A DNA stretch of 64,000 bases from Mobula birostris (GCF_030028105.1 NC_092380.1:70057717-70121716), one strand, 5' to 3'; numbered from the stretch's first letter, positions 16,180 to 51,842 are shown. Notes: a model not told the origin generated them from the letters alone. Program-made: numbers and translations.

Positions 16180-16493
16180 TCAAAATGTTAAATGAAACTT
16201 TTGTTCTATTCTTTTGCTTGTCTCTGAGTGAAATATCGTACATCTGACTTCCAAGCCCCGATCAGATCGTTCTGGAGCAAATTCTATGCTGGTTGTTGAA
16301 GAAAAAAGACCACTTGCAGTAATCTGAGGTTGACTATTATTCACAGGTCCTGTGAAGGGTTGTTCTCCTTTGAACCACTTCACTTCAATTTCCAGTGGTA
16401 CATAATTGGTCAGTGAAACTGTGAAAGTAGCCATTTTGTTTTCCTCCAGATGTGTTGGGTTGCACTTGATTTCAGACACAGTGGGGAAATGTC
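16180..16493 (-). CDS. Exon 10: post-TM C1-like Ig domain 6, ending in TGA
   Basis: ttccactttaag|GA CAT TTC...TTT TGA. FTVSLTNYVP..VKWFKG..SGLFSSTTS..VRCTIFH; the B-strand Cys is replaced by V. Confidence 0.87.
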
Positions 16494-17499
16494 CTTAAAG
16501 TGGAACACAACATGGAAATATAGTCAGTCCCATTGACTAGAGCTGATTGTTCAAATTCTGACAAATAAATTTTCCAAAGTTAAGATAAATATGTTGAATG
16601 TAGAAATTTCAAATACTAAAGCTTATACAGTAGACAAGACCGCTATAGATTAAAGCATCTGAGAAAATGATATATCACATATATCCAAGTAAACATTCAA
16701 AACGGCACCGTTTGTAGGCTAAATAAATGTCAGCAGGCCTACATAAATCCTTAATCAGGACGGAATATAGGAGTAGAAAGTGGAAACAACAAAATTTATT
16801 AGATAAAGATATTTTCTAGAGTTTAATAAAAAATTATACACTTTCAGGATGGGCAAATAAAAGCATGAATTACTGAGCAGTCGGAAAAGATGTTAACAGT
16901 TTACATGGGAAACTAGGCTGGTTGTGTTTCTGATGAATAGCCAATAACAAGTGTTAAGAAACATAACTTTTACAATGTAGTATTGAAATGCCTTGAGCAA
17001 CTCTTATTAGTGATTCTAAATATCACATCTGGACCCTTGTTTCCAATGACATCATACATTTACTGAGAGGAGTAAAAGTGGGTAATTGAACAAACTCCAA
17101 TCCTCAAATGGAATATTTGATCCTATTATACCCAGTAATCTCATAGATGAGGATCTATAAAAGGCAGCTAAGAGTTAACATATTGCTTTGGTTCTGGAGT
17201 GTGTATAAGCCAGGTTTGCCAAAATAGTACTCTTCCACCTCCAAGCCCATTAGTAAATCAGATAGGTTTAAAAATGGTCCCATAATTATTTTTTAAAAGT
17301 CCTAAAATTGCTAAGGTGTACTTTGTTCTCAAGGCTACAATAATGTCCCACCTAATTCATATGTTGGAAGGTTCAAAATTTGAAATGTTGAAAAATTAAG
17401 TGAAATATGACACTGATTCAGTCACATGCTCAGCTTTTAACATGGATGTAAAAGTGTACTTGGTTTATTGAGTTATCGAATAATCGGAGCAGCCACTTA

Positions 17500-20420
17500 G
17501 AATCACACAGCCACAGAACACTTCAGCATAGAACCAGGCCCTTTGGCTCATCTAGACCATGCTGATCCATTGATCTGCTTAGTCCCATCGACCTGCACCT
17601 GGACCATAACCCTCCATACCTCTCCCATCCAGATACCTATCCAAATTTCTCTTAAATGTTGAAATCGAACCCGCATCCACCACTTGTGCTGACAGCTCAT
17701 TCCACATTCTCACCACCCTCTCAGTGAAGAAGTTTCCCCTTGTGTTCCCCTTAAAAATTTCACCTTTCACCCTTAGCCAATTACCACTAGTTCTAGTCTC
17801 ACCTAACCTCACTGCAAAAAGCCTGCTTGTATTTGCACTATCAATACTACTCATAATTTTTGTACCTCTATCAAATCTCCCCTCAATTTTCTACATTCTA
17901 GGGAATAAAGTCTTAACCTATTTAACCTTCTCCTATAACTCAGGTCCTCAAGTGTTGGCAGTATCCTTGTAAATTTTCTTTGCACTCTTTCAACCTTATT
18001 GGGCAGGTGGCCAAGTGGTTAAGGAGTTCGTCTAGTTTTCTCAAGGTCGCTAGTTCGAGCCTCAGCTGTGGCGGTGCATTTGTGCCCTTGAGCAAGGCAC
18101 TTAATCACACATTGCTCTAGTCTGTGTGAGCAGTGGCGCCCCGCATAGACTTCTAATCTGCACCTTGTAAGGCATGAAAATGCCCGATGCAGGCCTCTCA
18201 TGGTCTGAGTCGATGTTCCCCCCAATCTTATTTACATCTTTCCTGTAGGTAGGTGACCAAAACTGCACACAATACTCCAAATTAGACCTCACACTGACAT
18301 CTTATACAATTTCAACATAATATCCCAATTCCTATACTCAATACATTGATTAATGAAGGCCAATGCTCCAAAAGCTTTCTTTTAAGACTATCTAAATGTG
18401 ATGCCATTTGCAGGAATTTATGGATCTGTATTCCCAGATTCCTCTGTTCTACTACACTCTTCAGTGTCCTACTGCTCTTCATGTAAGACCGGGTTGGTGT
18501 TCCCAAAGTGCAACACCTCACACTTGTCTACATTAAATTCCATTTGCCAGCTGGTCCAGATCCTGCTACATGCTTTGATAGTCTTCCTTGCTGTCCACTA
18601 CACCCCCTAATCATGGTGTCATCAGCAAAGTGGCTGATCCAGTTTACTGCATTATTATACAGATCATTGATGTAGATGACAAACAACAATAGACCCAGCA
18701 CTAATCCCTGTGGCACACTACTAGTCATAGGCTTCCAGTCAGAGAAGCAACCATTTACTACCTCATCATGAATGCCAAGTGTCTGAGGCTTCTTGACCAA
18801 CCTCCCATGCAGCACTTCATCAAAAGCCTCACTAAAGTCCATGTGGGCAACGTCCACTGTCTTGCCTTAATCAACTTTACTGGCTTGTTCCTTGAAAAAC
18901 TCTATAAGATTTGTTAGACAAGACCTACCATGCACAAAGCCATGTTAACTATCCCTAATCAATCCCTATCTATCCAAATACTTATATATCTGGACCTTTA
19001 GACCACCTCCCAATAACATTCCCACTACTGATTTTGTGGCGTATTCATAGAGCCTTTCGTAAACAATGGAACAACATTAGCTATCCTCCAATTCTCTGGA
19101 ACCTCACCCATACCTAAGGATGTTTTAAATATCTCTCCTAGGGTCCCTACAATTTCTGCTCTAGCCTCCCACAGGGTCCAGGGAAATACCTTGTTAGGCC
19201 CTAGAGATTTATCCATCCTAACTCACCTCAAGATAGCAAACACGTCTTCCTCTGTAATCTGTATACGGTCCAAGACCTCACTGCTGCCTTGCTTCACATC
19301 CATAGACTATGCGTCCATCTTCCAGTTAAATACAAATGTAAAAAAATATCCATTCAAGATCTCCCCCATCTCTTTTGGTTTCACTTATAGATTACCACTT
19401 TCATCCTCCAGAGGAGCAATGTTGGTCCTTTGCTATCCTTTTGGTTTTAATATATCTGAGAAGACCTTAGGATTCTCCTTCACCTTGTCTGCTAGAGAAA
19501 CCTCATGCCTTCTTTTAGCCCTCCTGATTTTCTTCTTAAGTGTTGTCTTGCATTTCTTCTACTCCTCAAGAACCTCATTTGTTCCTGCCTGTCTATAACA
19601 TACCTGCTATGCTCTTCCATTTTTGTCTTAACTAGCACCTGATTATCTTTCGAAAACTTAAGGTTACTAAACCTGTTATCCTTGCCTTTTATTCTGACAG
19701 GAGCATACAAACTGTCCCAATTCACACTTGCCAGATCCTCTCTGATACCATCAGAATAGACCTTTCTCCAAATTAGAATCTCAACCTATGGACCAGATCT
19801 ATCTTTTTGCATATTTACTTTGAAAGCAATGGCTTGTGGTCACTGGATGCAAAGTGTTCTCGTACACAAACTTCTGTCACCTGCCCTGTCTCATTCCCTA
19901 ATAGCAAATCAAATATTGCGCACACACTCATTGGGACTTCTATGTACTAATTAAGGAAACTTTCCTGAACACATTTGACAAATTCTATCCCATCAAGCCT
20001 TTATGGAAGTCCCAGTCAATATGTGGAAGGTTAAAATCACCTATTACAACCTCATGTTTCCTGAAAGAGTCAGCAATCTCTCTACAAATTTGCTCTTCTT
20101 AAATCCTGTGGAGTGTTGGGTGGTCCATAATATAATCCCATTAATGTGCTCATGCCTTTCTTAGTCTTCTGTTCTATGCATAAAGCCTTAGTGACCAAGA
20201 TCTCCTGTCTGACACTCCTCCCTCCTCTAATCCCTCCTGCTCTATCACATCTGAAACAACTTAACTCCAGAACATTGACCTGCCAGTCCTGCCCCTCCTG
20301 CAACAAAGTCTCACTAATAGCTACAATGTCATAATTCCATGTGCTGATCCATGCTCTAAATTCATCCGCTTTTCTACAATACTCCTTGCATTGAAATATA
20401 CGCAGATCAGAACATTAGTG
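17500..20420 (-). mobile_element. CR1 ORF2 (APE-RT), degraded, with a SINE inserted
   Basis: Continuous CR1 motifs (MDFSEAFDEVLHGRL, VPQGLVLG, FADDT, ETRTSGNWLRVKG). Confidence 0.85.
18001..18222 (+). mobile_element. tRNA-derived SINE with ~10-bp TSD
   Basis: Box A TGGCCAAGTGG and box B AGTTCGAGCC. Flanked by caaccttatt (17991-18000) and caatcttatt (18223-18232) inside a CR1. Confidence 0.75.
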
Positions 20421-20459
20421 CAACCATGTTCAAACTACTGATTCCCAATTTTGTATGTA

Positions 20460-23150: not shown

Positions 23151-23239
23151 GATTTACATTTTTCTCCATAACCACTCCACGAACTGTTCCGTGGCCCCCG
23201 CAACTCTAGTTTAAACCATGCCCCCCCCGTGCAACATTT

Positions 23240-24000
23240 GCAAATTTTCCCACTATTTTGGACACTCTCGGAGAACAAAACTCATCAAGAAAAGAGCCAG
23301 GAACTTCTTCCTTCATTCGGGGGCACTACGCCACTTATTTGGGGCAGGAGAATGTTGTCGAAGTTTCTAACTGGCGTCAAATGCATGCACTTGTGTGACC
23401 ATTAGAAGTTACACTGTGCTTGGAGTGAGCTGTTTTTAAGGAGCATCAGTTGAATGTGCTTGTGTTTATAGAGCACTGATTTTTGTCACTGATCATTGGT
23501 GAGAAACAAGCAGTAAGACGATTCAGAACCGTTTTGCTTGCTGTGGTTTCAAGTATTCAGGCTTGGAGATACTAGGAACAGCCAGGAGTGAAAATGAAAT
23601 GATTACACCACTTAACCAAGTTAAGAATGAAAAAGAGTTTGAAGGTATTGACAATCGTATAACGATAATGAAGATTTGGTGATTGCAGTCATCAATAGCA
23701 TTGTATGAAGGCAGCCCATTGTCTGCACTGATTTTGTTCATTTATAATCAATCAAAAGAAGCAGCAATGTACACTGGATGAACTACTAGGAACTAATACA
23801 GTTTTATAGTACTGTAGTGGTATTGAAAGTGTTCTAATTTGTTTTGTATTTCATTTAAATACATAATTTGTTATTCAGTTAAATGGTAGTTTGTCTCTTA
23901 CTATTTCCATGAAACTTAGGCTAATTGGGCAGCCACTTAACTGGACCAAATTGTACTGGTCTGATGTGTCCCAATTAACTGGACTCAATTGTACTTCAAT
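23240..24000 (+). mobile_element. Tigger/pogo-like DNA transposon relic
   Basis: Terminal ...gtcccaattaactgga-like end and a degraded transposase-tail-like segment. Boundaries are uncertain. Confidence 0.45.
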
Positions 24001-24201
24001 TCAAAGCCCATCTTTTCTGCTATTAATACCTTTACTCAAGTAAAGGTTTATAAACTCACCTGGGCCCATGCTGGAAACAAGTATATGAAAACAAATTATG
24101 TTATTCAAAAACAATTAGCAGTTGGTTTTTTTACTCTGATAAATTCAGTTCTTGCTAACAAAATTAATAAACGTATAGGGTTTTGCACCAGTTTAACTTA
24201 C

Positions 24202-24513
24202 CTGGAAGCGGTAAACGAAACTGCTTTTTAATACCATCAGATGAAAGTCCATTTTTCACCACAATGGCAAATTTCTTATTATAATGCAATGCTGTTGGTA
24301 TAAACTCCAGACAGGAGGACAAATGATAAGATCCATCCTTTTCCATTACGGGGCTTGAATTTTTTACTCCTTTTAAGAAGGGTTCCTCATCCATTAGCCA
24401 TTGGGTGGAAATTTCATTGTGAGAAAAACTGGTTACATTACATTTAAGAACAAGAGGCTGGCCATATAATGGATTTTCTGGCTCGAGAATGACATCAGAA
24501 AGCTTTGGAATTC
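24202..24513 (-). CDS. Exon 9: post-TM C1-like Ig domain 5
   Basis: tttttcttcaaatag|GA ATT CCA...CCA G|gtaagt, 312 nt. LKCNVTSFSH..TQWL..KDGSYHLSS; the F-strand Cys is replaced (FAIVVKN). Confidence 0.87.
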
Positions 24514-25249
24514 CTATTTGAAGAAAAAGCAGACACTGTTTACTTACTGCTTTTGCTCTATATTATTTAAGCAACCCTGCCTTCTCCCATACAAATACTA
24601 TTGTAATCAGATGAAATTTTATTGAAGAATAGAATTACCAGAATTCCAGGGAAGGAAAAACACTATTATATTCTGATTTAGGTACACTTTTGGGCTGTTA
24701 ATCTGAAGTTCCCAAAAGAGCTGACTAAATTTAAAACTAATCAACTGACAATATATAAAAACACTTCAAAACAGCTTTTCTATGTGTTTCAGACTTACTA
24801 AATTGTACTTACTTAATTAGCTAGTAATCAAGAAACGGATCCCACTTACCAAAGAAATATTTGGAAAGCAAATAAAGATGCAAATGTTGGAATCTGAGAA
24901 AAGAATGGAACTGCAGGAAGAACTCAGTTGTCAAGCAGCATGTGCGGAAAGAGAAAATGGTTAACGCTGCAGCTGGACAACCCTTCATCAGAACGAAGAA
25001 GTAAACAAAGTTGACGTTAGTTTAAACAGCAGAGGAGATGAGGAAGGACAATGGGTGGAACAAACGGGGTGTAATGTTATTACTATTGAATGAATATTTG
25101 TGTAACACATTGCTAACATTTTGCAGTCTTGGTCCTGTTGATTCATCTGGCTTTCATGCTGAGCAGGCCAGAAAAGAAAATGAAAGAAAGGAAAGGAGTG
25201 GGTGAGAGGATGAAGCAGTATTGAAATTACAAATGGCAAGTCCAGATAA

Positions 25250-25875
25250 AAACAGAAAGAAAAAACAAGTTAACAAAAGTTGGTGGCCAGCCATTTCAAT
25301 TCTACTTCCCATTCCCATACCTACATGTCAGACCATGGCCTCCTCTACTGCCAGAATGAGATCACACTCAGGCTGGAGGAGCAAAATCTTATATTCTGTC
25401 TGGGTAGCCTCCAACCTGATGGCATGAACATTGAGTTCTCTAACTTACGTTAATTGTCCCCCTTCACCATTCCCCAATCCCATTTCCCTCTTTCACCTCT
25501 TTACCTGTCCATCATCTCCCTCTGTGCTCCTCCCCTTTGCCTTTCTTCCATGGTCTTCCAGTATCTATCAGATTCCCCCTTCTCCAGCCTTTTATTTTTT
25601 TTTTATCAATCAACTTCCCAACTCTTTACCCCCCCTTCCCAGTTTCACCTATCACCTTGTACTTCTTCCTCTCCTCCCCTCCCCCCACCTTCTTGCTCTG
25701 ACTTCTCATTTTTTTACCAGTTCTGATGTCCTGAAACATTGACTGCTTTCTCTTTTCCATAGATGCTGCCTGGCCTATTGGATGTGGAGGTATATTGGCC
25801 TTCTACATCTGGCCCTTTTATATTGTACATCCAATAGTCCAGCTGAGTTCCTCCACCATTTTGTGTGTGCTAACT
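25250..25875 (+). mobile_element. Penelope-derived CT-rich element carrying a templated insertion
   Basis: Same family as 58245-58765 and 62285-63180 (cactctggttggaggaa-like segment, CT-rich body, gatgctgcctggcc..gctgagttcctcc tail). Confidence 0.65.
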
Positions 25876-26439
25876 AGAGTTGGACAATTCAATATTGAGA
25901 TTCAACTTGGGTTAGATAGCTGAAACATCTAACGTATTGTCACATGACAAAATTCAGTTCACCTCATTGATGCATACTTATTTTTATCACTGTGTGATAT
26001 TCTTTGTATAATATAAAAGGGCCAGACATTGCAGAGAAGTCTTCATACCCAGAATTATGGTTTGAACTTGTCCCACACATTTGTTTATTTTATCCAGATG
26101 TAGAAGGCCAATCTACCTCCACATCCAATAGTCCAGCAGCAACGGTAACTATACCAGGTCCCAAATCTAAAGTAACCCCAACCATCTATGACAGGCACAA
26201 ATGGAGGCAGAATTTTTACAGGCAGTAAAAACATAAAATTTCTTAAACTTTTTAATGTTTCTAACACCCAGAGTTAATTTAAAAAATTTAATTATACAAG
26301 ATCAAGAATATGAACATAAAACAGTTTAAAGCTTTAAATGGATAAAAATTAATAATAGTGTCAAGATGGTTGTTGTGATGCATCTAGTGTGGTAGTGTTT
26401 GTCACTCTTACTTTCAGCTTCCACCGCTGGCTCACAGTC

Positions 26440-26900
26440 TCGCGAAAAGGATACCCAAATGTGTAAATCTCTCCCTACCAGTACATGGCCTCTCCAACAG
26501 CAAGCCCCAAGCAGTGCCTCCTCATTGCAAACACATGGAAACTGAACTCCTTTTGGACTCGGGCTGAACTACAGATGATGGGGAGGAGGTCTGGTGTCTG
26601 CACACATAGCACGCAGACCCAGCAGCATATAGAAACGCCTTGGTGCTTGTGAACCAGATCCCCAGCTATAAGTAAATAGCCCCATTGCCTTGTGGGCAGC
26701 CTCAGGAGAGACAAAGGCCACGGGAGTAAACCCAGACAGCAAATCCGGAGTGGAGCCCTTAAGGTGGCTGGACAATATTGAACATTCATCCGGCAGCTCC
26801 TGCAGCCATACTTGTGCCAAATGTATTGTTTCATCGGCTTTCCTTTGGACTACACTGGTGAGGCCAAGAGAGGGATCTTGATGACTGGGCATCTCAGGAT
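26440..26900 (+). mobile_element. RTE/BovB-like 5' region fragment
   Basis: ccggagtggagcccttaagg..ggcagctcctgcagcc..gtgccaaatgtatt resembles RTE 5' leader sequence. Recognition only. Confidence 0.45.
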
Positions 26901-27815
26901 CTCCATTATCTTCTGTCCAGGCTTGTGATGATGGTCATCACTCTTTTCCTTCAAGACAGATGGATGCCAACCAATAACATAAAAAGAAAATAATTGATAG
27001 AAGTTCCTTGCCTGCTCTTTAACCCACTTTAAAAAGAATGTGATCTCAGATCCTGAAGCAGGTTGGATCTGACACAGGATTCAAGTGGCAATCCCCTATA
27101 ATAATGCTAGCGAATCTGAAGCAGTGGCTTGAGTCTCTATTCAAACTCCATGGAGAGATCAGTGATGCAGCAAACTATTCCCCAAAATAGCACCAGGGAG
27201 CCCTAGCAACACTGAGTTCCACCACAGGAATCTAGCAATAAGGTGAAGCAATTTCCCAGGAAGATGCCAAGGAATCCATGTAACCTCTAAGTTACATCAC
27301 TGGATTCCATTTGGAGTGCAGTTAAAGAACAAATCAAATCCCCAGAATAACTGCAGGGTATCATCCTGGGCCCTATTAGTAATTCTAAAGCGTCTGCAGC
27401 AGCTGGCTAAACTTGTGGTCTTCAAATCAGCCAGTGACTCTTCACCTTCCATTTTTACAATGTGCACTGAATGTTGTTATTTCCAAACAAAACAGCAAAC
27501 AGTCAGCTGGATCAGGGCATCTCTCTTTTGTTTTTACTTAATTACAGAAATTTTTTAATAAATTCTAATTTCTAATAGTTTAAATGCAATTTCTTTCCCA
27601 AAATTTGACTGACAAGTAGAGAATTTTACCATAAAGTTTGTATATCATGATTTACTACATGTGTATTTGTAGTCTTTTAATAAAAACACACACATTTCAG
27701 TGTAACAATTTTGTACTATTAAATGTGTGAAATTTTGACATGTTGATAGCTATAGAAATATGTAGCTCTCTAAAACAGTATAAATGTAGAAATTAAGAAT
27801 ACATTGAATTCATAC

Positions 27816-28139
27816 CTCCAAGATGCAATGTGTGAAAAATCCTCGTGGGTCTGTGAGAAGTTGGAAAATGAAGAGCCTCAACTTTGAAATCAATTTGACG
27901 ATCTTCTACTGAAATTATGTATTTATATCGACTCTCTCTGTAGAAGAAGCCGGTATTTTTATCTATCTCTGGGGTGGTAGAAATTATTTCATTATCATCA
28001 ATCTTCTTATCATTTTTGAACCACATAAACATGACATTCTCTGGAAAGAAGCCATAAGCAACACATAGGAATGTTGCTTCGTTTCCTGGCTCTGGGTATT
28101 GTGGTTCAACCGTCATGTTGTCCATTAATGGAGAAGATA
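27816..28139 (-). CDS. Exon 8: post-TM C1-like Ig domain 4
   Basis: atttacag|TA TCT TCT...GGA G|gtatga, 324 nt. FLCVAYGFFP..FMWFKN..TGFFYRES; the F-strand Cys is replaced (FKVEALH). Confidence 0.88.
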
Positions 28140-30470
28140 CTGTAAATATCAAAATAAATTGTTAAGTGAAGTGGTTTTACAACCTACTTAAATAACCCAA
28201 ACAAAATTATACAAGAAAACAGTCACAATTATCTTGAATTTGAGCTACTAAGATTAGCATTTCAGCATGAAAAAGTATTGGACTTGCATTACTGAGAAAC
28301 CTTTGGGCTGAGATGAGTCTGTAGCCAGACAAGAGATAGGGAACATGGCAGCTCCATCGCATCCATCAGAAGGTGCAGAATGCAGAATGACATCACATAG
28401 AGCCACTGCCCCTTCTCCCCAGCATGTCTCTTACTGGCCATAACATTCAGAATGCAACCTTAAGCCGCATAATTCAGTGCTAGACAATGATATAGCTGCT
28501 ACACATTCCCTTGGTGTCTCTCTCCAGGTGGCTATGAGGCCATTTCAACTATTTTAATGCTGCTGCAAAAGTCTAGTTTCTCAAAGAGATTTCAAGCACA
28601 GCTGAAATTGGGTGTGTGAAGGGTGGGTGCAGGGGTTTTCTCTGTGTCCCCAACAGAATGGAGCTGCCAATAACACATCCATATACATTCCTATAATAAC
28701 CCATTTTAACTATAATTATTCTACTCGTATTCTCATTCTTGAGAATGTATTGACTCATAAAGCAAGGTGGCAGTGTAGTTTCTCAGTCCACCTCAGTCCA
28801 AACTCTCTTCTCATACTTTGCCCTGATCAATGTCTCAATCACAAAGCCTCACATTTTTTCCTCTGATCTGTTTAAAAAAAACTCTTAATAACTTCTGACA
28901 ATCTCCTTGTCCCTTTGTCTACCACTCCGTACACTTTCACTCTGCTTTACAGACTTGAATTTTCTCCCAGTGCTAAATATTTCCTTTCCCCACTTCCTCT
29001 TTTAATTAGAATAAACATATTTCATTTGTCAGTAGAGTGCTTGCTCACTCAATTTAAGTGTACCATGTCTCAACAGAACAATCTCAAAAGAATGCTAAAT
29101 CCTATGAATCAAGGCCCTTGCTACCCATACAACTTAAATCATAGATTTAATATGTTATTTGCTTGTACCTGTATCAATTTGATCAAGGATAATATAGAGA
29201 ACTCAGCTCAAGTATTTAATACCGATAGATATACATCTAAATCTAACTTCTTAAATTTTCTCAGCAGAACCACATTCTAAACATATTTCATGTTTGATAA
29301 AACCAACAAAGAAAACTGAGCATTCTTCCTCCAGTTTTGCCAGCAGTGAATCCAGAACTTAGAATGGATCGGTGCATCAATCTAATAGGTTACCCATTAT
29401 ACTAACAGTAATTAAATTAACAGTTAACTAATTTGTGTTCTACAAGGGTTAATGAAATTTTGCAAACTAAAGATTTTTAAAATTTGTATCAAACAAACCA
29501 ATGTGCTTGTGAAGCAATAATATTTTACCACATTGCAGATTACCATTATTATGCACTATACCACTCTATGCAGGTAGTGGACATCATGTGACTTTCCATA
29601 ATCACACAGAAAAAAAATTCACTCCTAAAACTATGCACCTTCAGACAGGGAAGTTATAAATAAAGCCAGCACAGAAGATTCAAGAAGCAAACAAGTCTTC
29701 ACCCAACTCACATGGTCTTATTGAAACTGGATACAAATCAGAAAAAAAGTTGCATTTACGGTCAATCGACTTATAAGCCACCCCAACAAGCTGATAGATC
29801 CATAGAGTTAAAGATCAGCTGGATAAAAATGAGGGAGAAAAAAATGGAAGGATATACTATTTTAGATTTAGTGGTAGTGTGTCTGTGCGGATGCTCACAT
29901 GGTATGTTACCAATGGCAAAGGGCCACTGGGGCTGATTGCCCCAATTCTACCATATAGAAGTTTTACTTTATTCTGTAATTGTGATTTTTTAAATTGGCG
30001 TGGCTTTAAAAGTTGAAGAGTTAAGTTCCTCGTATACCTTTTCCAACTTTGTCTCTATAGTAACATCTAATTATCGAACTTATTCTAGCCAACAACCGAG
30101 CAGCCTGCCCGGGATTGGATTTTGACCCTCAAAGATTGCATCCATATCCATATACCTTTCTGCTTTCTTCAAGAAAAAACTCACTGAGATATCTGACTAG
30201 ATTTCAAGTTGTGAAAATAAAAACTTCGAGTGAAAAGATAATTTTCTGGTCCCATAACAAGTGGCCAATCTTAAACTGTCCAAAGTTAGCTTTTCCAGTT
30301 TGACCAGCCATGAAGCTGAAACTAGAATGTATATCAGAATGAACCTGATAGATTATCCATACCACCAACAATAATTTAACAAAAGCTCCTGCATGTATCC
30401 ATTTATGTTCTCTAATGGCTATTGGAATATTGCAAAATAAAAAGTGTTAATAAATAAAACATTTACTCAC

Positions 30471-30782
30471 TCAATTTAAACAATTTACAGCTAGTTTTCT
30501 TGGTGTCTGTCATACTTTCATGCTGGAATTCACACGTTAATAACTTTCCCAAATCTTCTCTTTCAGGAATAAATTTCAAATGACTTGTGCAGCTATAACG
30601 GCCATCTTTTCCCAAGATAGCTTCAGATTCAGCATTCATTTCCTCCAGTATATTATTATCCATTTTCCAGATAACTTTGATGTTTTTTGGGAAGAAGGAA
30701 TATATTCGGCATGATGCATAACCAAATTCTTCTACAATTGGGACTTCAGGAACGATTTTTATATCACCACATTTTGGGATTG
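30471..30782 (-). CDS. Exon 7: post-TM C1-like Ig domain 3
   Basis: ctttgctgcttag|CA ATC CCA...TTG A|gtgagt, 312 nt. ASCRIYSFFPKNIKVIW..KDGRYSCTS..LTCEFQH, both Cys present. Confidence 0.88.
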
Positions 30783-31049
30783 CTAAGCAGCAAAGAAAGG
30801 GAAAAATAAACCGTAAAAGATTGCGACAAACTACAGGTTTTGTTTAAGAACCAGCTTTAGATGGAATCATTAAAAAGAGGATACTGATATACAGTTTGAT
30901 GGGGCTTTTGTAGCACATTCAATAGATCACTGAAGTATTATAGATAGCTGGAGAAATCTGAAGACTCAAGTCCAAACCCTTCATGATACTAGGGAAAATT
31001 AAACTCAGGTAATTAAATAAATCTATACTAACCATAAACAGTACAGAAT

Positions 31050-32135
31050 AGGAACATGCCTTTCACTCCACAATCTTGTGCCAATCAAATTTCATAGTCA
31101 AATGCCTAACAAAACTAATCCATTCTAACATCATGCCAACCACTGAAGTTAGGCTTACTGGCCTATAATTTCACAGTTTTACCTCTCTCCTTTTTAAAAT
31201 GTGGAGCGACATTTATGATTTTCCAGTGCTCCAGCACCACTCCAGAAGGGTCTTGCTATTAACAGTGCCCTGTCCCTTTGCATTTGAATTTTCAAATTGA
31301 AACACATCACATTTGGCCAAAGATAAACTCCATCTGCAACTGATCTATATCCCACTGCATCCTTTGCTAGTCAACTATTTTAACCAAAACACTGCCAATT
31401 TGCATATCATCTACAAACTTCCTAACCCATCCATCTACGATTTCAACCAGGTCATTTAGGTATTTGGCCAATAACAGAGGTCTCAGTATGGATCCACACG
31501 AATACCAGTCACAGACATTCAGCAAGAATAGGTCCTGTCTACCACTATCCTCTCTCTTCTAGGGGCACATAAATTCAGAATTCACCATGGATCCCACATA
31601 TTTATATCTCTTCAATGAACCTCCTCCGAGGGACCTTATCAAATGTCTAAGTAAAATCCATGTAAACAACATCCACAGCTCTATCTTCATCATTTCCTCA
31701 AAAAGACTTAATCGAGCTAGTTAGACACAACTTGCACTGCACAAAGCTGTGCTGATTATCCCTCAATATGGTTTTCCAAATGCTCATAAATCCCATCCCT
31801 AAGAATCCTCATCAGCAAGTTCCCTATTAGTGATGTGAAATTCTCCTGTCTATTGTTAGCAGGATGATTCCCATTTCCTTTCTTAAATAATGGAACCACA
31901 TTAGCTACTTGACAATTCTCTGGGACTTCACATGTGGCTAGAGAGGACATGGTCAAGATCCCAGCAATCTCATTGCTTGCCTTCCTTAATAATCTGAGGC
32001 ATATCCCATCGGGACCTGGGGATTTATCCACCTTAATGTTCTTTGAGAGAACCAATAAACACTTGTTCTTTATCTCAACATGCCCTGGTAAATTAGCATG
32101 CTCCACACTGGTGTCCCTACCCTCCTTGTCCTAAA
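31050..32135 (-). mobile_element. CR1 RT fragments
   Basis: VDKSPGPDGICLRLL..WQVANVVPLFKKG-type motifs. Confidence 0.8.
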
Positions 32136-33071
32136 GCTTTGGTATTCCACCTGAACCTAAGATGAATACCTGGATCCATGGAAATAGACAAGCTTTCTTT
32201 CAGCCTTATATCATCCAATTCCTTGACTCAGCCCAATTTTGGCTTAAACTTTTACTGAGAGACAATAATTCTAGCCTCAACTACTGCAATGATTTGTGCC
32301 CTACCTCTGATTCCTGCATTCAGTAAATATTAGCTTATTTAAAACTATTTCCTGCACCTTAACTCTTGTTCCTTCACCAATAATAACTACTTTTCATTTC
32401 CAGACAGCAGTGTCATTGGCAGTCAGGACTTCAGCCACTTAACTTGTATATGTTATGGAACTTGCTTCAGAAGCTTCTGAGGCTCTGTGTCATCTTGGTG
32501 CCTTACAATTCACCATAAAACCTATCAGATCTTTAGCTTATTCTAGTTATGGAACAATTAAGAGCCTTTGGAAGCATTTCTCTGCAACTCACACATTCCA
32601 ACAGTTCTGTTAATGTAACAACAAGGGTGGCAAATGACGAGAAGATCAGAAACACAGCAGAATAAAAGTGAAGATGAATTTTGCATTAAAACAGAGGGCA
32701 CGCTAAAACATTGGTCAGAAATAATCAATAAATTAATAACTGATATAATTATTTCATATTTTAATTATTACCAAGTTAATACTTTATCCCCACACCTTCA
32801 TCGAGATCTTAAAATATAGATTTATGTTTTTGTTAGCACAAATTAGAGGTCATTGCCTGTGACCTCTACCTTAATATCTTAAAAAAAATCATACCATAAG
32901 AACAATAAATTATTTGGCTGTAAAACAAGGAATTTGGTGTTAGTGCCTAAATTAATATGTTTAAACCTCTAGAAGTTCTTTCTGGGCTGATTCCAAGATA
33001 ACCTAAATATCGTAGTTAAAACAATAGTAAAACATGATACGCAAATATGAACTAATACATTCTGACTGTAC

Positions 33072-33449
33072 CTTTTACGCTTAGTGTAACACCCTTCTGT
33101 ATTTCTGAACCTGTGGACAGATGTTCAGCTTCACAAATATACTCTGTATCATGGTCTTCCTGAATGGTTGGTATAAAAGCAAGAACACTTAAGATACTGT
33201 AAGTATGGTCTTCGTATGTCACCTCATGTAGGGTGTGGGAATATTTGGGAAGATTTGTTTCATTCCCAGCAAAAGTTTCTTGAACTCGTGGTACATATTT
33301 CACAATTTCTTTCAATTTGTCGTTCTGCTTCTGGTACCAAGTGATAGCCAGTGGTCTTGGTTTAAATCCATCAATTGGACAGGACAATGCAATCAATTCT
33401 TCATGAATGATGCAAGGAGGTACTAGAATGTCTGTCATCTTTGGTGCAA
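33072..33449 (-). CDS. Exon 6: post-TM C1-like Ig domain 2
   Basis: aaag|TT GCA CCA AAG...AAA G|gtacag, 378 nt. LSCPIDGFKP..ITWY..DHTYSILS..YICEAEH, both Cys present. Confidence 0.88.
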
Positions 33450-33809
33450 CTTTTTTTATTGAGAAGGGAAAAAAAGGATAGAATATTTAATGTCGTCAGC
33501 ACACAACATTGTCTTATTTTGCAAAAGATAAAATAGACTGAGAGGTTTATTTATTAATTAGATAAATAAACCTTCAGTTTTTTAAAATCTGTTGCAAACA
33601 GAGTATAAATAAAAATACAGCAATTTTAACAGAAGCTGCACCTTTCTGTTAAAATTTACTGCCAAGTACTTCAGGCTTATAAGATTTAACTACAAAAAAG
33701 ACTGCAAATTTTAAAAAAGATATAGTAATACAAAAAAGTCAAAAGACAAAGAGAAAACATGAGTGAAGATCCAACAACTTCAAAAAATCTGTTACTCTAA
33801 GACACTGTA

Positions 33810-34184
33810 TGTGGGGTGATTGATAAGTTTGTGGCCTAAGGTAGAAGGAGTCAATTTTAGAAAACATTGCACTTTTTCAACATAGTCCCCTCCTAAGGTA
33901 GAAGGAGATGAGTTATACAGCTCTCGTTACCTGCACATGCAGTTCACTCTCTGAGTGATTATGCAAAAAGTTTGGTTAATAACTCATCTCCTTCTACCTT
34001 AGGCCAGGAACTTATCAATCACCCCTGCTGTGGACACTTTCTGAAGGTCCAGGATCCATATGCTCCACGACCGCTGGACTAAGTGTATAAATGTAGGAGG
34101 GGGCTATGTTGAAAAATAAATGTGCTAGGTTTTCTAAAATTGATTCCTTCTACCTTAAGCCACGAACTTATCAATCACCCCTCG
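33810..34184. mobile_element. Composite mariner-type MITE
   Basis: TA-flanked. TIR ggggtgattgataagttt.ggcctaaggtagaagga at both ends, plus internal extra TIR copies (~33893 and ~33990-34026). Confidence 0.75.
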
Positions 34185-35639
34185 TACATGGCCATAAATA
34201 TAGGGCTAAAAAGTTATTGTTAACTTACTTATACAAAACCTGTATTCAACATTATAGCTCTTTTACCATATCTCTTACAAACTTCTACTCTCCAGAGCCT
34301 ACAATCAAATTGTCGTACACAACTGAAACTGCCGCTCTTAAAAAGGATTCATCCAACAAGTTAATCTAATACAAATGTGGTCTCACCAGAACTTAGTTGG
34401 GGATCAATCTGAGTACATGGCAGTTATCATCTTCTCCTACCTACTTGCAAACTAAAAGTGTGATACTATCCTGCACAAAAGGTCATGAGAAAGATAACAT
34501 ATGCAACAGTTTACAGACATAAAAAACATATTAGGTAATGTTGCTTTTTGGAATGAACTGGATAGTAGTTGAATTCAATGCTATTCTTACCTACAGTTTG
34601 CAATGCAATTTGAGTGTCTACAACGTGTTAGACTGATAGTTGCAAAGTACAGAAACTTAATTCCCTGTGCCTCTCTCTAATTCTCTCTTGCTGTTCTGGA
34701 GTATTTGCAAAATGCTGAATTTAAGTTGATGAGGATTTATTTAAAGTCAGTTCAGTCAGGAAACAATGCAACTGGAAATCTGTATCCTCCCTTTTATCAA
34801 GCTTTCCACAATCATTCTCATCAGTTCACTGAGAAAATCTAGCCCATAGAATTGTACTTGGCTTAGTTAAATATTTTGCAAAATAGAACTGAATTCAAAT
34901 GACATCAAAAACAGAATATCAATGTGAGTATATCATCTCCACCATAATTGCTGAACTAGAAACAACTGAGCAACACTAGACCTTTGAATCTCTCACCCTT
35001 TTAAAAACTCTGCATTCCTATTTTTTCTACAATGGATGACTTCATATTTTTCTGTATTATATTCCATCTGCTATGTCCTTTCTCTTTCACTTAGCCTATG
35101 CTATATCTAGCAGAGGCCATTCTGTACCTTCCTAACAACTCACACTGCCACCTCCAGCTTTGTTTCAACAGCTAATTATGGATATATTGCACTGGGTCCC
35201 CTCATTCAAATCACTGATATAAATTAGAAATCAGACTTATTATCATTGATATAAGTCATTGCATTTGTTGCTTTGTAGCCGCAGTACTGTGCAGGCATAA
35301 CAAATGTTGGTTGGCTGATCAAAGTAACAAGATGGTTCGTGGATCATTCAGAAATCTGAAGGCAGAGGGGGGAGAAAAAACTGATCCTAAACTGATCCTC
35401 TGAGATGTTGTTGAAACTGTTCACCCTTTCCAGCACTGAGACCACAGCGAGGATTGGTCCATGTTCTCCCGAAGACTACAATCAATTTGCTGGTCATGCT
35501 GATGTTGAATGCAAGGTTGTTGCTGCTTCACCACTCGACCAGTTGATCTATTTGCTCCTTTATGCTTCATGTCTATTCACATTTTTTGCAATATCTTCAG
35601 CTCAGACATTCCTTACAAGAATATTTAAGTAATTCTCCA

Positions 35640-36930
35640 TGTATACAAGACTCTGACCCGTTGGACATTATTTTAAAATGAACCCTTTAGTGAAAGGTTT
35701 TATTCGAAAAATTTAAAATTTACTATTACAACAGGATAACTATCCTTTACTTAAGATTAAGCAAGATTGGGAAAGAGAGCTTAATATGATCTTGATAACA
35801 GAGGATTGGTTGCGAATTCTGAAGTTGGTCAACTCTTCTTCGATTTGTGCCAGTCATTCTCTAATTCAATTTAAAACTGTACATCGTTATTATTTGATAA
35901 AGAAGAGATTGTCTAAGATATTTCCTAATGTAAATAGTCAGTGTGATAGATGTAAAACTGAGATAGCAACATTGACACATATGTTTTGGTCGTGTTCTGT
36001 ATTGAAACAGTTTTGGAAATCTTATTTTTTCTACAATTTCTAAAGCTTTAAAAATCAATTTACAACCTAATAAATTGACAGTTTTGTTTGGTATAATTCC
36101 TCAATATATTCATGGTATTTCTATATCAGACCAACACGTTTGTCACATTATTGGCTAGAAGGGCTATTTTATTAAAATGGAAAGATGCCTCTGCTCCCAC
36201 TTTGATACAATGGTTCTCTCAGGTGACGTTATGTCTTAGTTTGGAAAAAATTAGAAGTCGAACTTTTGATCCTACATTTGACTTCGAGAAAAGGTGGGGG
36301 TCTTTTATCCGTTATTATCATTTGATTTGAGTTAATTAAGGTGGTCCTTTTCTGATGCTTGGATATATGGATTTGGTTGACGGAATGATGTCTTTTTTTA
36401 TGGAAGCTTGTATGGCGTATAGCTCAAACAACAGGAATTCTGCAGATGCTGGAAATTCAAGCAACACACATCAAAGTTGCTGGTGAATGCAGCAGGCCAG
36501 GCAGCATCTCTAGGAAGAGGTGCAGTCGACGTTTCAGGCCGAGACCCTTCGTCAGGACAGGGTCTCAGCCTGAAACGTCGACTGCACCTCTTCCTAGAGA
36601 TGCTGCCTGGCCTGCTGCGTTCACCAGCAACTTTTATGGCGTATAGCTCCCAGTTTGTGCTCCAAATGGTTTTCTTTCCCCCCTTTTTTTGTTATTAGGG
36701 TTTTTTTTTGTTTTAGTTAGTAGGGGTTCTTTTTTCTTTCTTTCCTTTTTCCAAAAAAAATAGCTTTAACATCTTGTTTTTTTTTATTATTATTGATATA
36801 TTGTTCAGTCTTGTTGATAGTTTAACTCTTATTCTACATATGGATATGTTGTCTTGATTATTTTGATGTATTTTTCTTTGTTGTTGATTTTCAATAACAA
36901 TTAATGAAAAAGATTTAAAAATGAAAATGA
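35640..36930 (+). mobile_element. L1 3' fragment interrupted by a fold-back element
   Basis: SICASHSLIQFKTVHR..CDRC..HMFWSC, then a T-rich 3'UTR and an (AAAATG)n tail. Confidence 0.85.
36426..36634. mobile_element. Penelope-derived fold-back insertion with 15-bp TSD
   Basis: TSD tatggcgtatagctc at 36411-36425 and 36635-36649. 76-bp inverted arms at 36473-36548 and 36559-36634. Confidence 0.85.
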
Positions 36931-37509
36931 AAATGCTTTATGTCACCATCTGAGACTCTGCCCACGACAATGGTGTCAGCAGTGAATTATAGATTACACT
37001 TCAACTGTACCTAGCCAGGCTGTCATGAGTGCGGGGGGAGACGAGCAGTGGGCTAAGCACACACTCTTGGGGTACACCTGCGTAGATTGTCAGGAGGAGG
37101 AGATATTAAATTATAAACATCTGATGCCCCAGGATTGATCACTAGAACACTGCAATAGTCGGAACCTCCAAGCCCAAAAATGACCTGCACTCTTTTTCCC
37201 CCTCTCTATTACATAATTCACAATTCATAGATAAACATTGCTTCCAATCGTGTGTGCTGTAATTTTATGTAATAATTGCTCGTTTAGTACAGTACCTATA
37301 GAAAGCCTCTCAAAATCCAAGTATACCTGTCCTCCAAATCAGGTGACACTAGTCCTTGTTGGGATACCAGTCAGTGCATATTGTAATAAAATGGATGATA
37401 GAAAAGTGGAGGGCTATATATGAGGGAAGGCTTAGATTGATCTTAAGAGTAAGTTAAAACATTGTCACAACACATGATGGACTGAAGAGCCTGCCAAGTG
37501 CTGTTATGT

Positions 37510-38400
37510 TCTATGTAATAGCATTTCCTCCTTGCAGACAATCAACACAGGCATACCTCAACTATATGTGCTTAGCCTACCGCTCTAATCCATCTACACT
37601 TATGACTGTGACTAGGTACATCTCAAATGTTATCTCTAAATTTAGTATCACTGTTGAGGGCAGAAACTCAGATGTTGAAAAGGAAGTGTACATGAGTGAG
37701 ATGGATTGGCTGGTTGAGTGCAGTCACAACAACAACTTTGCACAAAGCATCAGCAAGACGAAGGAACTGATTGTAGTCTTCAGGAAGGGGAAGTCGAGGG
37801 AACACGCACTGGTCCTCATTGAACAGTCACTGGTGGAAAGGGTGGGCAGCTTCATGGTCCTGGGTTTCAACAAGTCAGAGGGTCTATCTTGGGCCCAACA
37901 CATTGTTATAATCATACAGAAGGAATATCAGTGACTCTTCTTCATTAGGAGTCTGAGAAGGTTCAGTATGCCACCAAAGACTTGCAAATTTCTACACATA
38001 CTGTATAGAGCATTCTCACTGGTTGCATAACAACCTGACATGGAGCCTCCAATGCCTCCGAAAGAGATCCAGCCAGTTTCTTTGCGGGGATAACCCTCCT
38101 CATCGCTGAGGAAATCTTCAAAAGGAATAGTGCCTCAGAAAGGCAGCATCAATCATTAAGGACTCTCACCATCTGGGACATGACCTCTTCACATTACGAT
38201 CATCCGGGATCAGGTAAAGGAGCCTGAAGACCCATGCTCCATGGTTTAGGAACAGCTTCTTTCTCTCTGCCATCAGATTTCTCAATAGAACACGAACTCA
38301 TGAATACTACTTCCTTACTCGTCTTTCACTCCATTTGTTTATTTTGTAACTTGCAGTACTTTTTATTTCATGAATATGCCAGAGATAATAAGCCTGATTC
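37510..38400 (+). mobile_element. Rex1/Babar-type RT 3' part
   Basis: LVECSHNNNFAQSISKTKELIVVFRK..SWAQH motifs and the family 3' tail. Confidence 0.75.
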
Positions 38401-38687
38401 TGAAATTAAACACTGGTAGTGCAGTGCTTACAAAGCAGTTAAGAATAAACAAGTGGATGGAGAAATTTGTAACTTCGTGTGTTCATTGTAATTTTCTAAT
38501 CAGAATTATGTTTAATATCACTGGCATACTATGCATTGTGAAATTCAAAAGTAGTGCAAAAAAAGAGAGGACAAAGATACCGATCCAGTCATGATCATTT
38601 CATTTTTCGCCCTTCTGAAACCATTCTACAATGAAGTAATTTTACTAATGACAAATATTCAGTTATTTTCATTGCTTTCTTACTTAC

Positions 38688-39110
38688 TTCCTTCAACTTT
38701 TAATGTGATGGTCTTAATAATAGGCTTTCTCAAATTGCTACTATGCAAAACTTGAAGTTTAAGAACAGCTTCATTATCTCTCTCAATTTCAGGGCAGAAG
38801 ATAACTTCACACTTCAGACTGGAGGTACCATCACTGTTGTTTGTGACAGCTGACATCTCAAATGCAAAAGCTTCCACTGGACATTCATAATCTGAAATAA
38901 GTCTCTGCTGATCGATCTCCTCAGGTGCTTTCAAGTTCTCAGACGGAGAAGTCCACTGGTAAATGCTATGTTCTGTTCCGCCATTTATTTGTAGAAACCA
39001 TTGAATAGAAATATTTGAAGGTTTATATCCAGATATCTGACAAGTCAGAACAGTTTCTTCCAAATGTACAATGCGTGGAGGCTGGCTGATATCAGAAACT
39101 TTAGGAGGTA
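38688..39110 (-). CDS. Exon 5: post-TM C1-like Ig domain 1 (with acidic insertion)
   Basis: tttttctag|TA CCT CCT AAA...GGA A|gtaagt, 423 nt. VLTCQISGYKP..IQWF..NSDGTSSL; the F-strand Cys is replaced (LKLQVLH). Confidence 0.88.
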
Positions 39111-51725: not shown

Positions 51726-51842
51726 CTTTTCTGAAATATCGCAGGTACATCACAAATCCAACGATCATGATCAGTGAACATATCAGTACACTAGCAAATA
51801 CACTGCCAGCTATTATTCCCACTGGCACAACAACTTCTGGCT
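51726..51842 (-). CDS. Exon 4: transmembrane helix EPEVVVPVGIIAGSVFASVLICSLIMIVGFVMYLRYFRK
   Basis: ttttttcacag|AG...AAA G|gtaag, 117 nt, symmetric phase 1-1. About 25 hydrophobic residues followed by RYFRK. Not reported in the ORF track in this frame. Confidence 0.9.

What the first reader, a model, noticed from the sequence alone, without database searches (positions are those of the whole stretch)
16180..39110. Disulfide cysteines are lost only in the post-TM Ig domains
Seen in sequence: both pre-TM domains keep the B- and F-strand Cys pair. Of the six post-TM domains, four lack one partner: D1 (F: LKLQV), D4 (F: FKVEA), D5 (F: FAIVV) and D6 (B: FTVSL). All six keep the C-strand Trp and proline motifs. 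Established knowledge: intradomain disulfides do not form stably in the reducing cytosol, and intracellular I-set Ig domains of titin-type proteins often lack them. Inference: this is independent evidence for cytosolic location and long-term selection on the fold. D2 and D3 keep both Cys and could be redox-sensitive.
Basis: partly seen in the sequence, partly recalled or inferred. Interest (0 to 1): 0.7.

Follow-up and report, generated by a model that had tools for sequence, protein, structure and literature searches.

The report
B7-H6-like gene with intracellular Ig tail
A manta-ray relative of the NK-cell ligand B7-H6 has its membrane anchor in mid-protein, so six antibody-type domains should lie inside the cell; four of them lost half of their usual disulfide pair over 400 million years ago yet stayed well conserved.

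Summary
Ten minus-strand exons splice into one 977-aa ORF: leader, V-set, C1-set, a 117-nt TM exon, then six C1-set-like domains (D1-D6).

- **Cys pattern:** V, C1, D2 and D3 keep the B/F cysteine pair. D1, D4 and D5 lack the F-strand Cys and D6 lacks the B-strand Cys. All keep the C-strand Trp.
- **RNA:** spliced contigs join V, C1 and TM, and TM runs directly into D1.
- **Identity:** the protein is 100% identical to an "uncharacterized protein" of Mobula birostris. V and C1 are closest to B7-H6/NCR3LG1.
- **Conservation:** the architecture and the position-specific Cys pattern recur in sharks, rays, chimaera, coelacanth, lungfish, bichirs and amphibians. Family-wide, 99/108 pre-TM C1-like domains keep both Cys, against 236/511 post-TM.
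- **Fold:** the tail models as six confident β-sandwiches.

A cytosolic tail is the best reading, but Cys loss alone does not prove it:
- The orphan Cys and the D2/D3 pairs are near-invariant.
- Some paralogues keep pairs throughout the tail.
- TM-exon-skipped (secreted) isoforms are predicted in four species.

The scan met this architecture before, in a paralogue 187 kb away (s1-145062) and in this gene's TM exon (s1-145716). I found no published description.

The parts
63704..63779 (-). Leader (signal peptide) exon, MACAGKLSPRLVPRVVTLLALLRLS, phase-1 donor. An alternative donor at 63572 extends the exon through an in-frame TAA.
   Evidence: Sequence read. tblastn of the Pristis orthologue residues 1-25 hits 63779-63705. 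Loose ends at the V exon in X13 (canonical donor) and X11 (extended exon).
54878..55234 (-). V-set Ig exon with the Cys25/Cys101 pair intact.
   Evidence: Pfam V-set E=7e-9. Best solved relative is B7-H6, 6yjp, E=2.4e-10. RNA joint 54878/53683 in four runs.
53363..53683 (-). Pre-TM C1-set Ig exon with the B/F Cys pair intact, plus an extra conserved Cys173.
   Evidence: Pfam C1-set E=6e-12. Best solved relative is B7-H6, E=7.7e-14. RNA joint 53363/51842.
51726..51842 (-). Symmetric 117-nt TM exon, EPEVVVPVGIIAGSVFASVLICSLIMIVGFVMYLRYFRK, with an acidic flank before the TM and a basic flank after it.
   Evidence: Sequence. Present in spliced contigs of X9, X10, X11 and X13. The loose end at 51726 is the reverse complement of the first 30 nt of D1.
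38688..39110 (-). D1, a C1-like Ig exon. B-strand Cys kept, F-strand Cys replaced by Leu (LKLQV), a conserved E-strand Cys366, and a long C-D insert.
   Evidence: The insert is the only low-pLDDT stretch in the tail model.
33072..33449 (-). D2, a C1-set Ig exon with both Cys (YICEAEH).
   Evidence: Pfam C1-set E=2e-8. Both Cys present in all 12 chondrichthyan orthologues. In the 29-sequence tail alignment the B Cys is invariant and the F Cys nearly so (≥90%).
30471..30782 (-). D3, a C1-like Ig exon with both Cys (LTCEFQH).
   Evidence: Both Cys invariant in the 29-sequence tail alignment.
27816..28139 (-). D4, a C1-set Ig exon. B-strand Cys kept, F-strand Cys replaced by Val (FKVEALH).
   Evidence: Across 31 family proteins the F position is V/M/I and never Cys, and the B Cys is kept in 29/31.
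24202..24513 (-). D5, a C1-like Ig exon. B-strand Cys kept, F-strand Cys replaced by Ile (FAIVV).
   Evidence: B Cys kept in 26/27 and the F position is mostly Phe.
16180..16493 (-). D6, the terminal C1-set Ig exon. B-strand Cys replaced by Val (FTVSL), F-strand Cys kept. TGA stop at 16180-16182, one codon before a donor-like GGTAAAT.
   Evidence: The HLTF C-terminus is shared with the Pristis, Hypanus and Narcine orthologues. No further Ig exons lie downstream in the window.

Best explanation
This is one expressed gene for a B7-H6 (NCR3LG1)-like type I membrane protein.

**Shown**
- The order of parts is signal peptide, V-set domain, C1-set domain, a single TM helix, then six contiguous C1-set-derived Ig domains that start right after the basic stop-transfer motif (…YLRYFRK|VPPKVSDI…). 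The stop codon follows D6.

**Inferred**
- By the standard signal-peptide and positive-inside rules, D1-D6 lie in the cytosol in the TM-containing isoform. They would form a rod of roughly six Ig domains under the membrane.
- Before cartilaginous and bony fishes split, one partner of the canonical B-F disulfide was replaced by a hydrophobic residue in D1, D4, D5 and D6. The fold no longer needed the bond there. The remaining Cys then stayed on as ordinary conserved core residues.
- D2 and D3 kept both Cys. Possible reasons are core packing, a disulfide formed in the secreted TM-skipped isoform, or a redox role.
- Function, by analogy only: the ectodomain is displayed to an NKp30-like receptor, while the Ig tail scaffolds or senses something inside the cell, as the B30.2 tail does in butyrophilins.
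For: - **Single ORF:** all exons are phase 1-1 with AG/GT sites and give one 952-aa frame plus the leader.
- **RNA:** spliced contigs in three runs of the same organism and one of a sister species show GT..AG joints V→C1 and C1→TM. The loose end after the TM exon matches the D1 start. Single contigs of 3109-3857 nt carry 2311-3054 nt beyond the TM exon, where D1-D6 account for 2064 nt. The same runs hold about 13% of the words of 24100-33500, which matches the exon share of D2-D5.
- **Gene models:** the protein is 100% identical to an NCBI Mobula birostris protein and 77% to the Pristis pectinata model, which has the same exon chain. A 958-aa member encoded on a 3517-nt Logan contig also contains the TM.
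- **Ectodomain:** V and C1 are closest to B7-H6 among solved structures.
- **Topology signals:** TM flanks are typically -1 upstream and +3 downstream in 31 family members.
- **Cys pattern:** conserved by position across sharks, rays, chimaera, coelacanth, lungfish, bichir and amphibians. Family-wide, 92% of pre-TM C1-like domains keep both Cys, against 46% post-TM.
- **Sequons:** no excess in the tail (131 observed vs 123 expected), against a mild excess in the ectodomain (69 vs 52).
- **Fold and selection:** the tail folds as six confident β-sandwiches, mean pLDDT 87.6, and is conserved about as well as the ectodomain.
Against: - No experiment shows the topology.
- The D2 and D3 cysteines are invariant or nearly so (≥90%), among the most conserved tail residues: three of the 13 invariant tail columns are Cys. 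The orphan Cys are also near-invariant. This fits a disulfide or thiol function at least as well as mere tolerance.
- D1 and D6 carry extra conserved Cys (366, 859) that might make non-canonical disulfides.
- A sequon in the D1 B-C region (8/12) and one in D5 (11/12, shifting between NVT and NFS) are fairly conserved among chondrichthyans.
- TM-exon-skipped isoforms are predicted in white shark, basking shark, a stingray paralogue and a caecilian. In those isoforms the same domains would be secreted.
- Paralogues with intact pairs through the tail exist: Leptodactylus 6/6 and bichir 10/11.
Confidence: 0.7

Rival explanations
1. D1-D6 mainly work outside the cell. The 117-nt symmetric TM exon is a cassette exon, and skipping it gives a secreted eight-Ig protein. 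On this view the Cys pattern reflects domain-specific structural solutions, such as a B-E disulfide in D1 or an A-F one in D6, and not a reducing environment.
For: - Exact TM-exon deletions (37-39 aa) appear in predicted isoforms of Microcaecilia, Carcharodon, Cetorhinus and Hemitrygon.
- The D2/D3 Cys pairs are invariant or nearly so (≥90%).
- Cys366 and Cys859 are conserved, as are the D1 and D5 sequons.
Against: - In the manta runs the assembled contigs run through C1-TM-D1 without a break. No TM-skipping loose end appears among the rows shown.
- The TM exon has strong splice sites. It is conserved at 59% mean identity and has an invariant Cys.
- It is present in the main models of every species examined.
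- The tail shows no sequon excess overall.
Confidence: 0.2
2. The tail reaches the ER lumen by a non-standard topology. One route would be translation from the signal-peptide-less transcript made by the alternative exon-1 donor, with the TM then acting as a type II signal anchor because the large folded N-terminus cannot translocate.
For: - An extended exon 1 with an in-frame TAA is present in a 3857-nt contig of X11.
- The NCBI Mobula model starts at an internal Met without a signal peptide.
Against: - The charge distribution around the TM favours a cytosolic C-terminus.
- V and C1 keep their disulfide Cys everywhere, as expected for lumenal domains.
- The canonical leader is used in the sister species and in orthologue models.
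- The extended transcript looks non-productive, with a 66-codon ORF followed by a stop.
Confidence: 0.05
3. Artefact: two neighbouring genes, or decaying pseudo-exons, were wrongly chained together because all Ig exons share phase 1.
For: Phase-1 Ig exons can be joined in frame by any gene predictor. A 12.6-kb TE-filled intron separates the TM exon from D1.
Against: - The TM→D1 junction is read directly in RNA contigs, and single contigs span V to beyond D6.
- All six exons are open, conserved and fold confidently.
- No leader exon lies before D1, and no stop or tail exon follows the TM exon in any orthologue model.
Confidence: 0.02

Closest known systems
B7-H6 / NCR3LG1 (B7 family ligand of NKp30)
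   Same: It has a signal peptide, an IgV plus IgC1 ectodomain and a single TM. V and C1 each have B7-H6 as their best solved-structure match (E=2.4e-10 and 7.7e-14). One frog member is annotated NCR3LG1.
   Different: By my own knowledge, human B7-H6 has a non-Ig, gag-like cytoplasmic tail. Here the tail is six C1-set-like Ig domains, and up to about 14 in frog paralogues. Orthology to mammalian B7-H6 and NKp30 binding were not tested.
Butyrophilins (B7-related, with an intracellular B30.2 sensor domain)
   Same: A B7-type V-C ectodomain is coupled through one TM to a large folded intracellular domain. This is a possible model for inside-out signalling.
   Different: The tail here has no PRY/SPRY domain. 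Only Ig families are on record for the orthologues.
Titin/obscurin-type intracellular Ig domains
   Same: These are Ig β-sandwiches that fold in the cytosol in tandem arrays, often without a structural disulfide (established knowledge). Titin I65-I70 is the top Foldseek hit for the six-domain model, but this is a generic array match with TM-score about 0.2.
   Different: Those are I-set domains in proteins with no signal peptide or TM. The domains here are C1-set by Pfam, and their nearest solved relatives by sequence are Ig constant domains and SIRP.
UrIg / UrIg2 of elasmobranchs (PMC12227049)
   Same: A non-rearranging shark and ray gene with a V domain and a long array of C1-type domains. 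UrIg2 appears among the sequence and fold hits.
   Different: In UrIg2 all C1 domains precede the TM and are extracellular. Here the array follows the TM, and the V domain is B7-like, not VJ-like.

Membership tests
B7 family, B7-H6 (NCR3LG1)-like | N-terminal signal peptide followed by an IgV and then an IgC1 ectodomain | tested here: met
   Leader exon at 63779-63704. Pfam V-set and C1-set. B7-H6 is the top PDB sequence hit for both domains.
B7 family, B7-H6 (NCR3LG1)-like | Single-pass type I TM after the C1 domain | tested here: met
   TM exon at 51842-51726 with an acidic flank before and a basic flank after. Spliced into the mRNA.
B7 family, B7-H6 (NCR3LG1)-like | Binds NKp30 (NCR3); orthology to mammalian NCR3LG1 | not tested
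   No binding data and no phylogeny against the other B7 members were produced. Only best-hit similarity is available.
C1-set immunoglobulin domain (D1-D6) | Profile match to C1-set and a seven-strand β-sandwich | tested here: met
   Pfam C1-set hits for all six, weak for D1, D3 and D5 (E between 4e-4 and 8e-4). Nearest solved relatives are Ig constant and SIRP C1 domains. The AF2 model gives six β-sandwiches with mean pLDDT 87.6.
C1-set immunoglobulin domain (D1-D6) | Canonical B-strand/F-strand cysteine pair | tested here: not met
   Met in D2 and D3 only. D1, D4 and D5 lack the F Cys and D6 lacks the B Cys. The pattern is conserved in orthologues.
C1-set immunoglobulin domain (D1-D6) | Invariant C-strand Trp | tested here: met
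   Trp is present in all six domains and in all chondrichthyan orthologues except D1 of the two skate-like sequences (P0169, P0170; Cys). It is less constant in D1 across the wider family (16/31).
Titin-type intracellular I-set Ig | I-set profile as best match; protein without signal peptide or TM | tested here: not met
   I-set scores are below C1-set or absent for D1-D6. The protein has both a leader and a TM.
UrIg/UrIg2 | VJ-type V domain followed by C1 domains, all upstream of the TM | tested here: not met
   Here the TM exon lies between C1 and the six-domain array. UrIg2 layout taken from PMC12227049.
Butyrophilin | Intracellular B30.2 (PRY/SPRY) domain | tested here: not met
   Only Ig-type Pfam families are on record for P0001, P0167 and the other orthologues. 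The exon-wise Pfam scan gives Ig families.

The most novel reading that the evidence does not exclude
Jawed vertebrates from sharks to amphibians, and at least one turtle, keep a family of B7-H6-like NK-ligand homologues that place classical C1-set antibody-type domains in the cytosol. A cassette TM exon toggles the same six-domain rod between a membrane-anchored intracellular form and a secreted form. The invariant D2/D3 cysteine pairs would act as an intracellular redox or stress switch that alters display or clustering of the ectodomain. This would be inside-out signalling like butyrophilin B30.2, built from Ig domains.
Probability: 0.12. Interest if true: 0.9.

Novelty: new variant of a known kind. 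Interest (0 to 1): 0.7.

Why it matters
C1-set Ig domains are the hallmark of extracellular adaptive-immunity molecules: Ig, TCR, MHC, β2m, tapasin, SIRP and the B7 family. To my knowledge none is known to work in the cytosol.

A family conserved for about 450 million years, with 4 to 14 such domains behind the membrane anchor of an NK-ligand homologue, would be a new use of this fold. Every member is annotated "uncharacterized".

The family is also a natural experiment on which Ig domains need their disulfide. Four positions lost it once and never regained it. Two kept it in every close orthologue examined.

The system is directly testable by topology assays, thiol mapping and isoform sequencing in shark, ray or Xenopus cells. 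It may also bear on how B7-H6/NKp30 recognition worked in early vertebrates.

Tried and rejected
- **IgM-to-IgD-type locus (first guess):** I first thought the TM exons of one gene were followed by the C exons of the next. The RNA junction TM→D1 and single contigs spanning V to past D6 reject this.
- **Fused gene models or pseudo-exons:** rejected for the same reason, and by conservation and fold confidence.
- **A second TM or further Ig exons downstream of D6:** none found by hydrophobicity scan or by tblastn with the D7-D9 domains of coelacanth, lungfish, bichir and chimaera proteins.
- **Fold searches with the six-domain model:** PDB and Swiss-Prot AFDB returned only generic multi-Ig arrays such as titin, IgM/IgE, nephrin and NCAM, at TM-scores of about 0.2-0.3. 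They were not informative about family.
- **Literature:** five full-text searches and three readable papers gave no description of post-TM or cytoplasmic Ig domains in B7-H6-like genes (25-27, 46). The two most relevant papers are not held and could not be checked: Flajnik et al. 2012, PMC3709836, and Ohta & Flajnik 2015, PMC4594805.
- **TM-skipping in the manta itself:** could not be quantified.
- **Cys-Cys distances for the alternative pairs (289-366, 859-933):** could not be measured because model coordinates are not exposed.


Full report
**1. What is in the window**

On the minus strand there are nine Ig or TM exons plus a leader.
- All internal exons are phase 1-1 with AG/GT boundaries: V-set 55234-54878, C1-set 53683-53363, a 117-nt TM exon 51842-51726, and six further Ig exons.
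- The six are D1 39110-38688, D2 33449-33072, D3 30782-30471, D4 28139-27816, D5 24513-24202 and D6 16493-16180.
- Spliced together they give one open frame of 952 residues. It ends in a TGA one codon before a donor-like GGTAAAT.
- The leader exon (MACAGKLSPRLVPRVVTLLALLRLS) lies at 63779-63704.
- Pfam calls the first domain V-set and all the others C1-set. The calls are weak for D1, D3 and D5.

**2. Check of the observation**

An alignment of the seven C1-like domains shows which canonical residues each keeps.
- The B-strand Cys is present in C1 and D1-D5 but is Val in D6.
- The F-strand Cys is present in C1, D2, D3 and D6 but is Leu, Val and Ile in D1, D4 and D5.
- The C-strand Trp is present in all. 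The V domain keeps its pair.

With only eight domains the contrast between pre-TM and post-TM could arise by chance (p = 0.21). The comparative data below are what make it meaningful.

**3. One mRNA, not two genes**

Two sets of probable RNA runs hold only the exonic share of words. This is true both for 51600-55300 and for 24100-33500.

I laid four runs on 51600-55300.
- All four show GT..AG joints 54878/53683 (V→C1) and 53363/51842 (C1→TM).
- In X10 and X11 the letters beyond 51726 are the reverse complement of TACCTCCTAAAGTTTCTGATATCAGCCAGC. That is the first 30 nt of D1 at 39110.
- Single contigs of 3109, 3857 and 3852 nt carry 2311-3054 nt beyond the TM exon. D1-D6 need 2064 nt.

The TM-included, full-length mRNA is therefore real. 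The contigs are not broken at the C1/TM boundary in the three runs of this organism.

**4. Identity and family**

- The protein is 100% identical over 945 residues to an NCBI "uncharacterized protein" of Mobula birostris. It is 87% identical to Hypanus, 77% to Pristis, 55-65% to other sharks and rays, and 46% to Callorhinchus.
- V and C1 each have human B7-H6 (NCR3LG1) as their best solved relative.
- An exhaustive HMMER search with D2 found 193 cluster representatives at E ≤ 0.001. Most are proteins of about 1000 aa with a TM near residue 250, followed by 4 to 14 matching domains.
- Names and species show the spread: elasmobranchs, chimaera, coelacanth, lungfish, bichirs, caecilian, newt, many frogs (greatly expanded, up to 2597 aa) and one turtle. 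All are uncharacterized except one frog entry called NCR3LG1.
- A 958-aa member comes from a 3517-nt Logan contig, so it looks like an mRNA. It also contains the TM.

**5. The cysteine pattern is ancient and position-specific**

- In all chondrichthyan orthologues that retain six tail domains, the post-TM pattern is [C·x][CWC][CWC][CWV/I][CWF/I][VWC].
- The same order is seen in coelacanth, lungfish, bichir and amphibians, which have extra domains after D6.
- In a set of 31 proteins chosen for the D2/D3 = CWC pattern, the figures are as follows:

| Domain | B-strand Cys kept | F-strand Cys kept |
|---|---|---|
| Pre-TM C1 | 31/31 | 31/31 |
| D1 | 25/31 | 3/31 |
| D4 | 29/31 | 0/31 |
| D5 | 26/27 | 6/27 |
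| D6 | 4/25 | 22/25 |

- Without any pattern filter, in 87 proteins, 99/108 pre-TM C1-like domains keep both Cys. Of the post-TM domains, 236/511 keep both, 160 keep one and 115 keep none. These counts are not phylogenetically independent.
- The losses therefore predate the split of cartilaginous and bony fishes.
- Since then the surviving partner has behaved as a conserved core residue. The replaced position varies only among hydrophobics.
No orthologue meets it. A few paralogues nearly do: Leptodactylus 6/6 and a bichir gene 10/11. Cysteine pairs are therefore not systematically purged from these tails.

**6. Evidence bearing on location**

*For a cytosolic tail*
- The protein has a signal peptide.
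- The TM has acidic upstream and basic downstream flanks in 31 members.
- D1 starts directly after the stop-transfer motif.
- Sequons are at expectation in the tail (131 vs 123) and mildly enriched in the ectodomain (69 vs 52).
- Frog paralogues have highly charged linkers and acidic C-termini between tail domains.

*Caveats*
- The D2/D3 cysteines account for three of the 13 invariant columns of a 29-sequence tail alignment; the D2 F-strand Cys is nearly invariant (≥90%).
- Cys366 on the D1 E strand and Cys859 on the D6 A strand are conserved. So are a sequon in D1 (8/12) and one in D5 (11/12) among chondrichthyans.
- Exact TM-exon deletions occur in predicted isoforms of a caecilian, two lamniform sharks and a stingray paralogue. 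A secreted eight-Ig form probably exists in at least some species.

The same domains may thus see both redox environments. That would explain why some pairs are kept.

**7. Fold and selection**

- AlphaFold2 with the orthologue alignment models the 689-residue tail as six β-sandwiches with mean pLDDT 87.6. Only the D1 insert is disordered.
- Per-domain mean pairwise identity among 11 chondrichthyan sequences is 52-62% for D1-D6, against 63-67% for V and C1.
- The disulfide-poor domains are as confident and as conserved as D2 and D3.
- By sequence the nearest solved relatives of D2-D3 are Ig constant domains and SIRP C1 domains, not I-set domains.
- Fold searches with the whole tail gave only generic Ig arrays.

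**8. Interpretation**

The best reading (confidence about 0.7) is a B7-H6-like type I membrane protein with a cytosolic tail built from C1-set-derived Ig domains. In four of the six, the structural disulfide became dispensable very early.
- Cys loss is consistent with that location but does not prove it.
- The main rival (about 0.2) is that the functionally important context of D1-D6 is the secreted, TM-skipped isoform.
- A flipped topology from a leaderless transcript (about 0.05) and an annotation artefact (about 0.02) are unlikely.
- The function of the tail is unknown. The butyrophilin analogy, a B7-type ectodomain coupled to an intracellular sensor domain, is an inference only.

**9. Comparison with what is known, and novelty**

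- The ectodomain passes the sequence tests for a B7-H6-like molecule. NKp30 binding and orthology were not tested.
- The tail domains meet the C1-set tests except for the Cys pair.
- The protein is not a titin-type I-set protein, not UrIg/UrIg2 (whose array precedes the TM; PMC12227049), and not a butyrophilin (no B30.2).
- Full-text searches found no description of post-TM Ig domains in B7-H6-like genes. The two most relevant papers were not available, so prior mention cannot be excluded.
- The scan has met this before. A note on this gene's TM exon (s1-145716) raised the cytosol/secretion switch. A follow-up on a paralogue 187 kb away (s1-145062) reached the same architectural conclusion. 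Those are AI notes and are not independent evidence.
- New here: the direct TM→D1 RNA junction, the family-wide cysteine counts, the invariance of the orphan Cys and the D2/D3 Cys, the TM-skipped isoforms, and the tail model.

Noticed in passing
window 63570-63779 (-): Exon 1 has two donors. The canonical one at 63704 ends the signal peptide and is used in the sister-species run X13. A downstream one at 63572 adds 132 nt (63703-63572) containing an in-frame TAA and is seen in a 3857-nt contig of X11. The NCBI Mobula birostris model (P0167) starts at an internal Met (MDTKIVE) with no signal peptide, probably because it follows the extended form.
   Followed up: partly
window 51726-55234 (-), V, C1 and TM exons: Between organism A and the sister species (run X13) the three exons differ at 13 sites: 10 non-synonymous and 3 synonymous (V 6:1, C1 3:2, TM 1:0). 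This hints at diversifying selection on the ectodomain, as expected for an immune ligand. The sample is very small.
   Followed up: partly
window 16179-16184 (-): The TGA stop sits one codon before a well-formed donor-like GGTAAAT at the end of D6. Coelacanth, lungfish, bichir and some chimaera or frog relatives continue with one to three more Ig domains. No relic of such exons is found downstream in the window. AATAAA lies about 200 nt after the stop.
   Followed up: partly
window 40400-50100 (+), inside the 12.6-kb TM→D1 intron: The intron is filled with transposable elements on the opposite strand: an L1-like LINE with intact-looking ORF1 (44915-45778) and ORF2 pieces (46777-50087), RT fragments at 43312-44649, and a 368-aa gag-like ORF at 40416-41522.
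   Followed up: no
window 52590-52960 and 54330-54700: Very high summed contig depth appears in all four RNA runs, with many short joints and loose ends. These look like expressed dispersed repeats inside the V-C1 and C1-TM introns, not exons of this gene.
   Followed up: no
TM exon and C1 exon (residues 248 and 173 of the leaderless protein): A cysteine inside the TM helix (Cys248) is invariant in 12 chondrichthyan orthologues. An extra Cys in the pre-TM C1 domain (Cys173, HFCTG) is invariant there and 94% conserved family-wide. These are candidate sites for palmitoylation or intermolecular disulfides.
   Followed up: no
related proteins P0003, P0006, P0020, P0046/P0192, P0065 (frogs): Frog paralogues have very long tails, up to about 14-16 Ig domains and 2597 aa in Xenopus tropicalis. 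The domains alternate between Cys-less (LWV) and Cys-paired (CWC), or are nearly identical repeats separated by charged linkers of about 76 aa. This indicates recent tandem duplication of two-domain units.
   Followed up: partly
window 57503-57663: A run of 161 N lies in the leader-to-V intron. I left it untouched.
   Followed up: no
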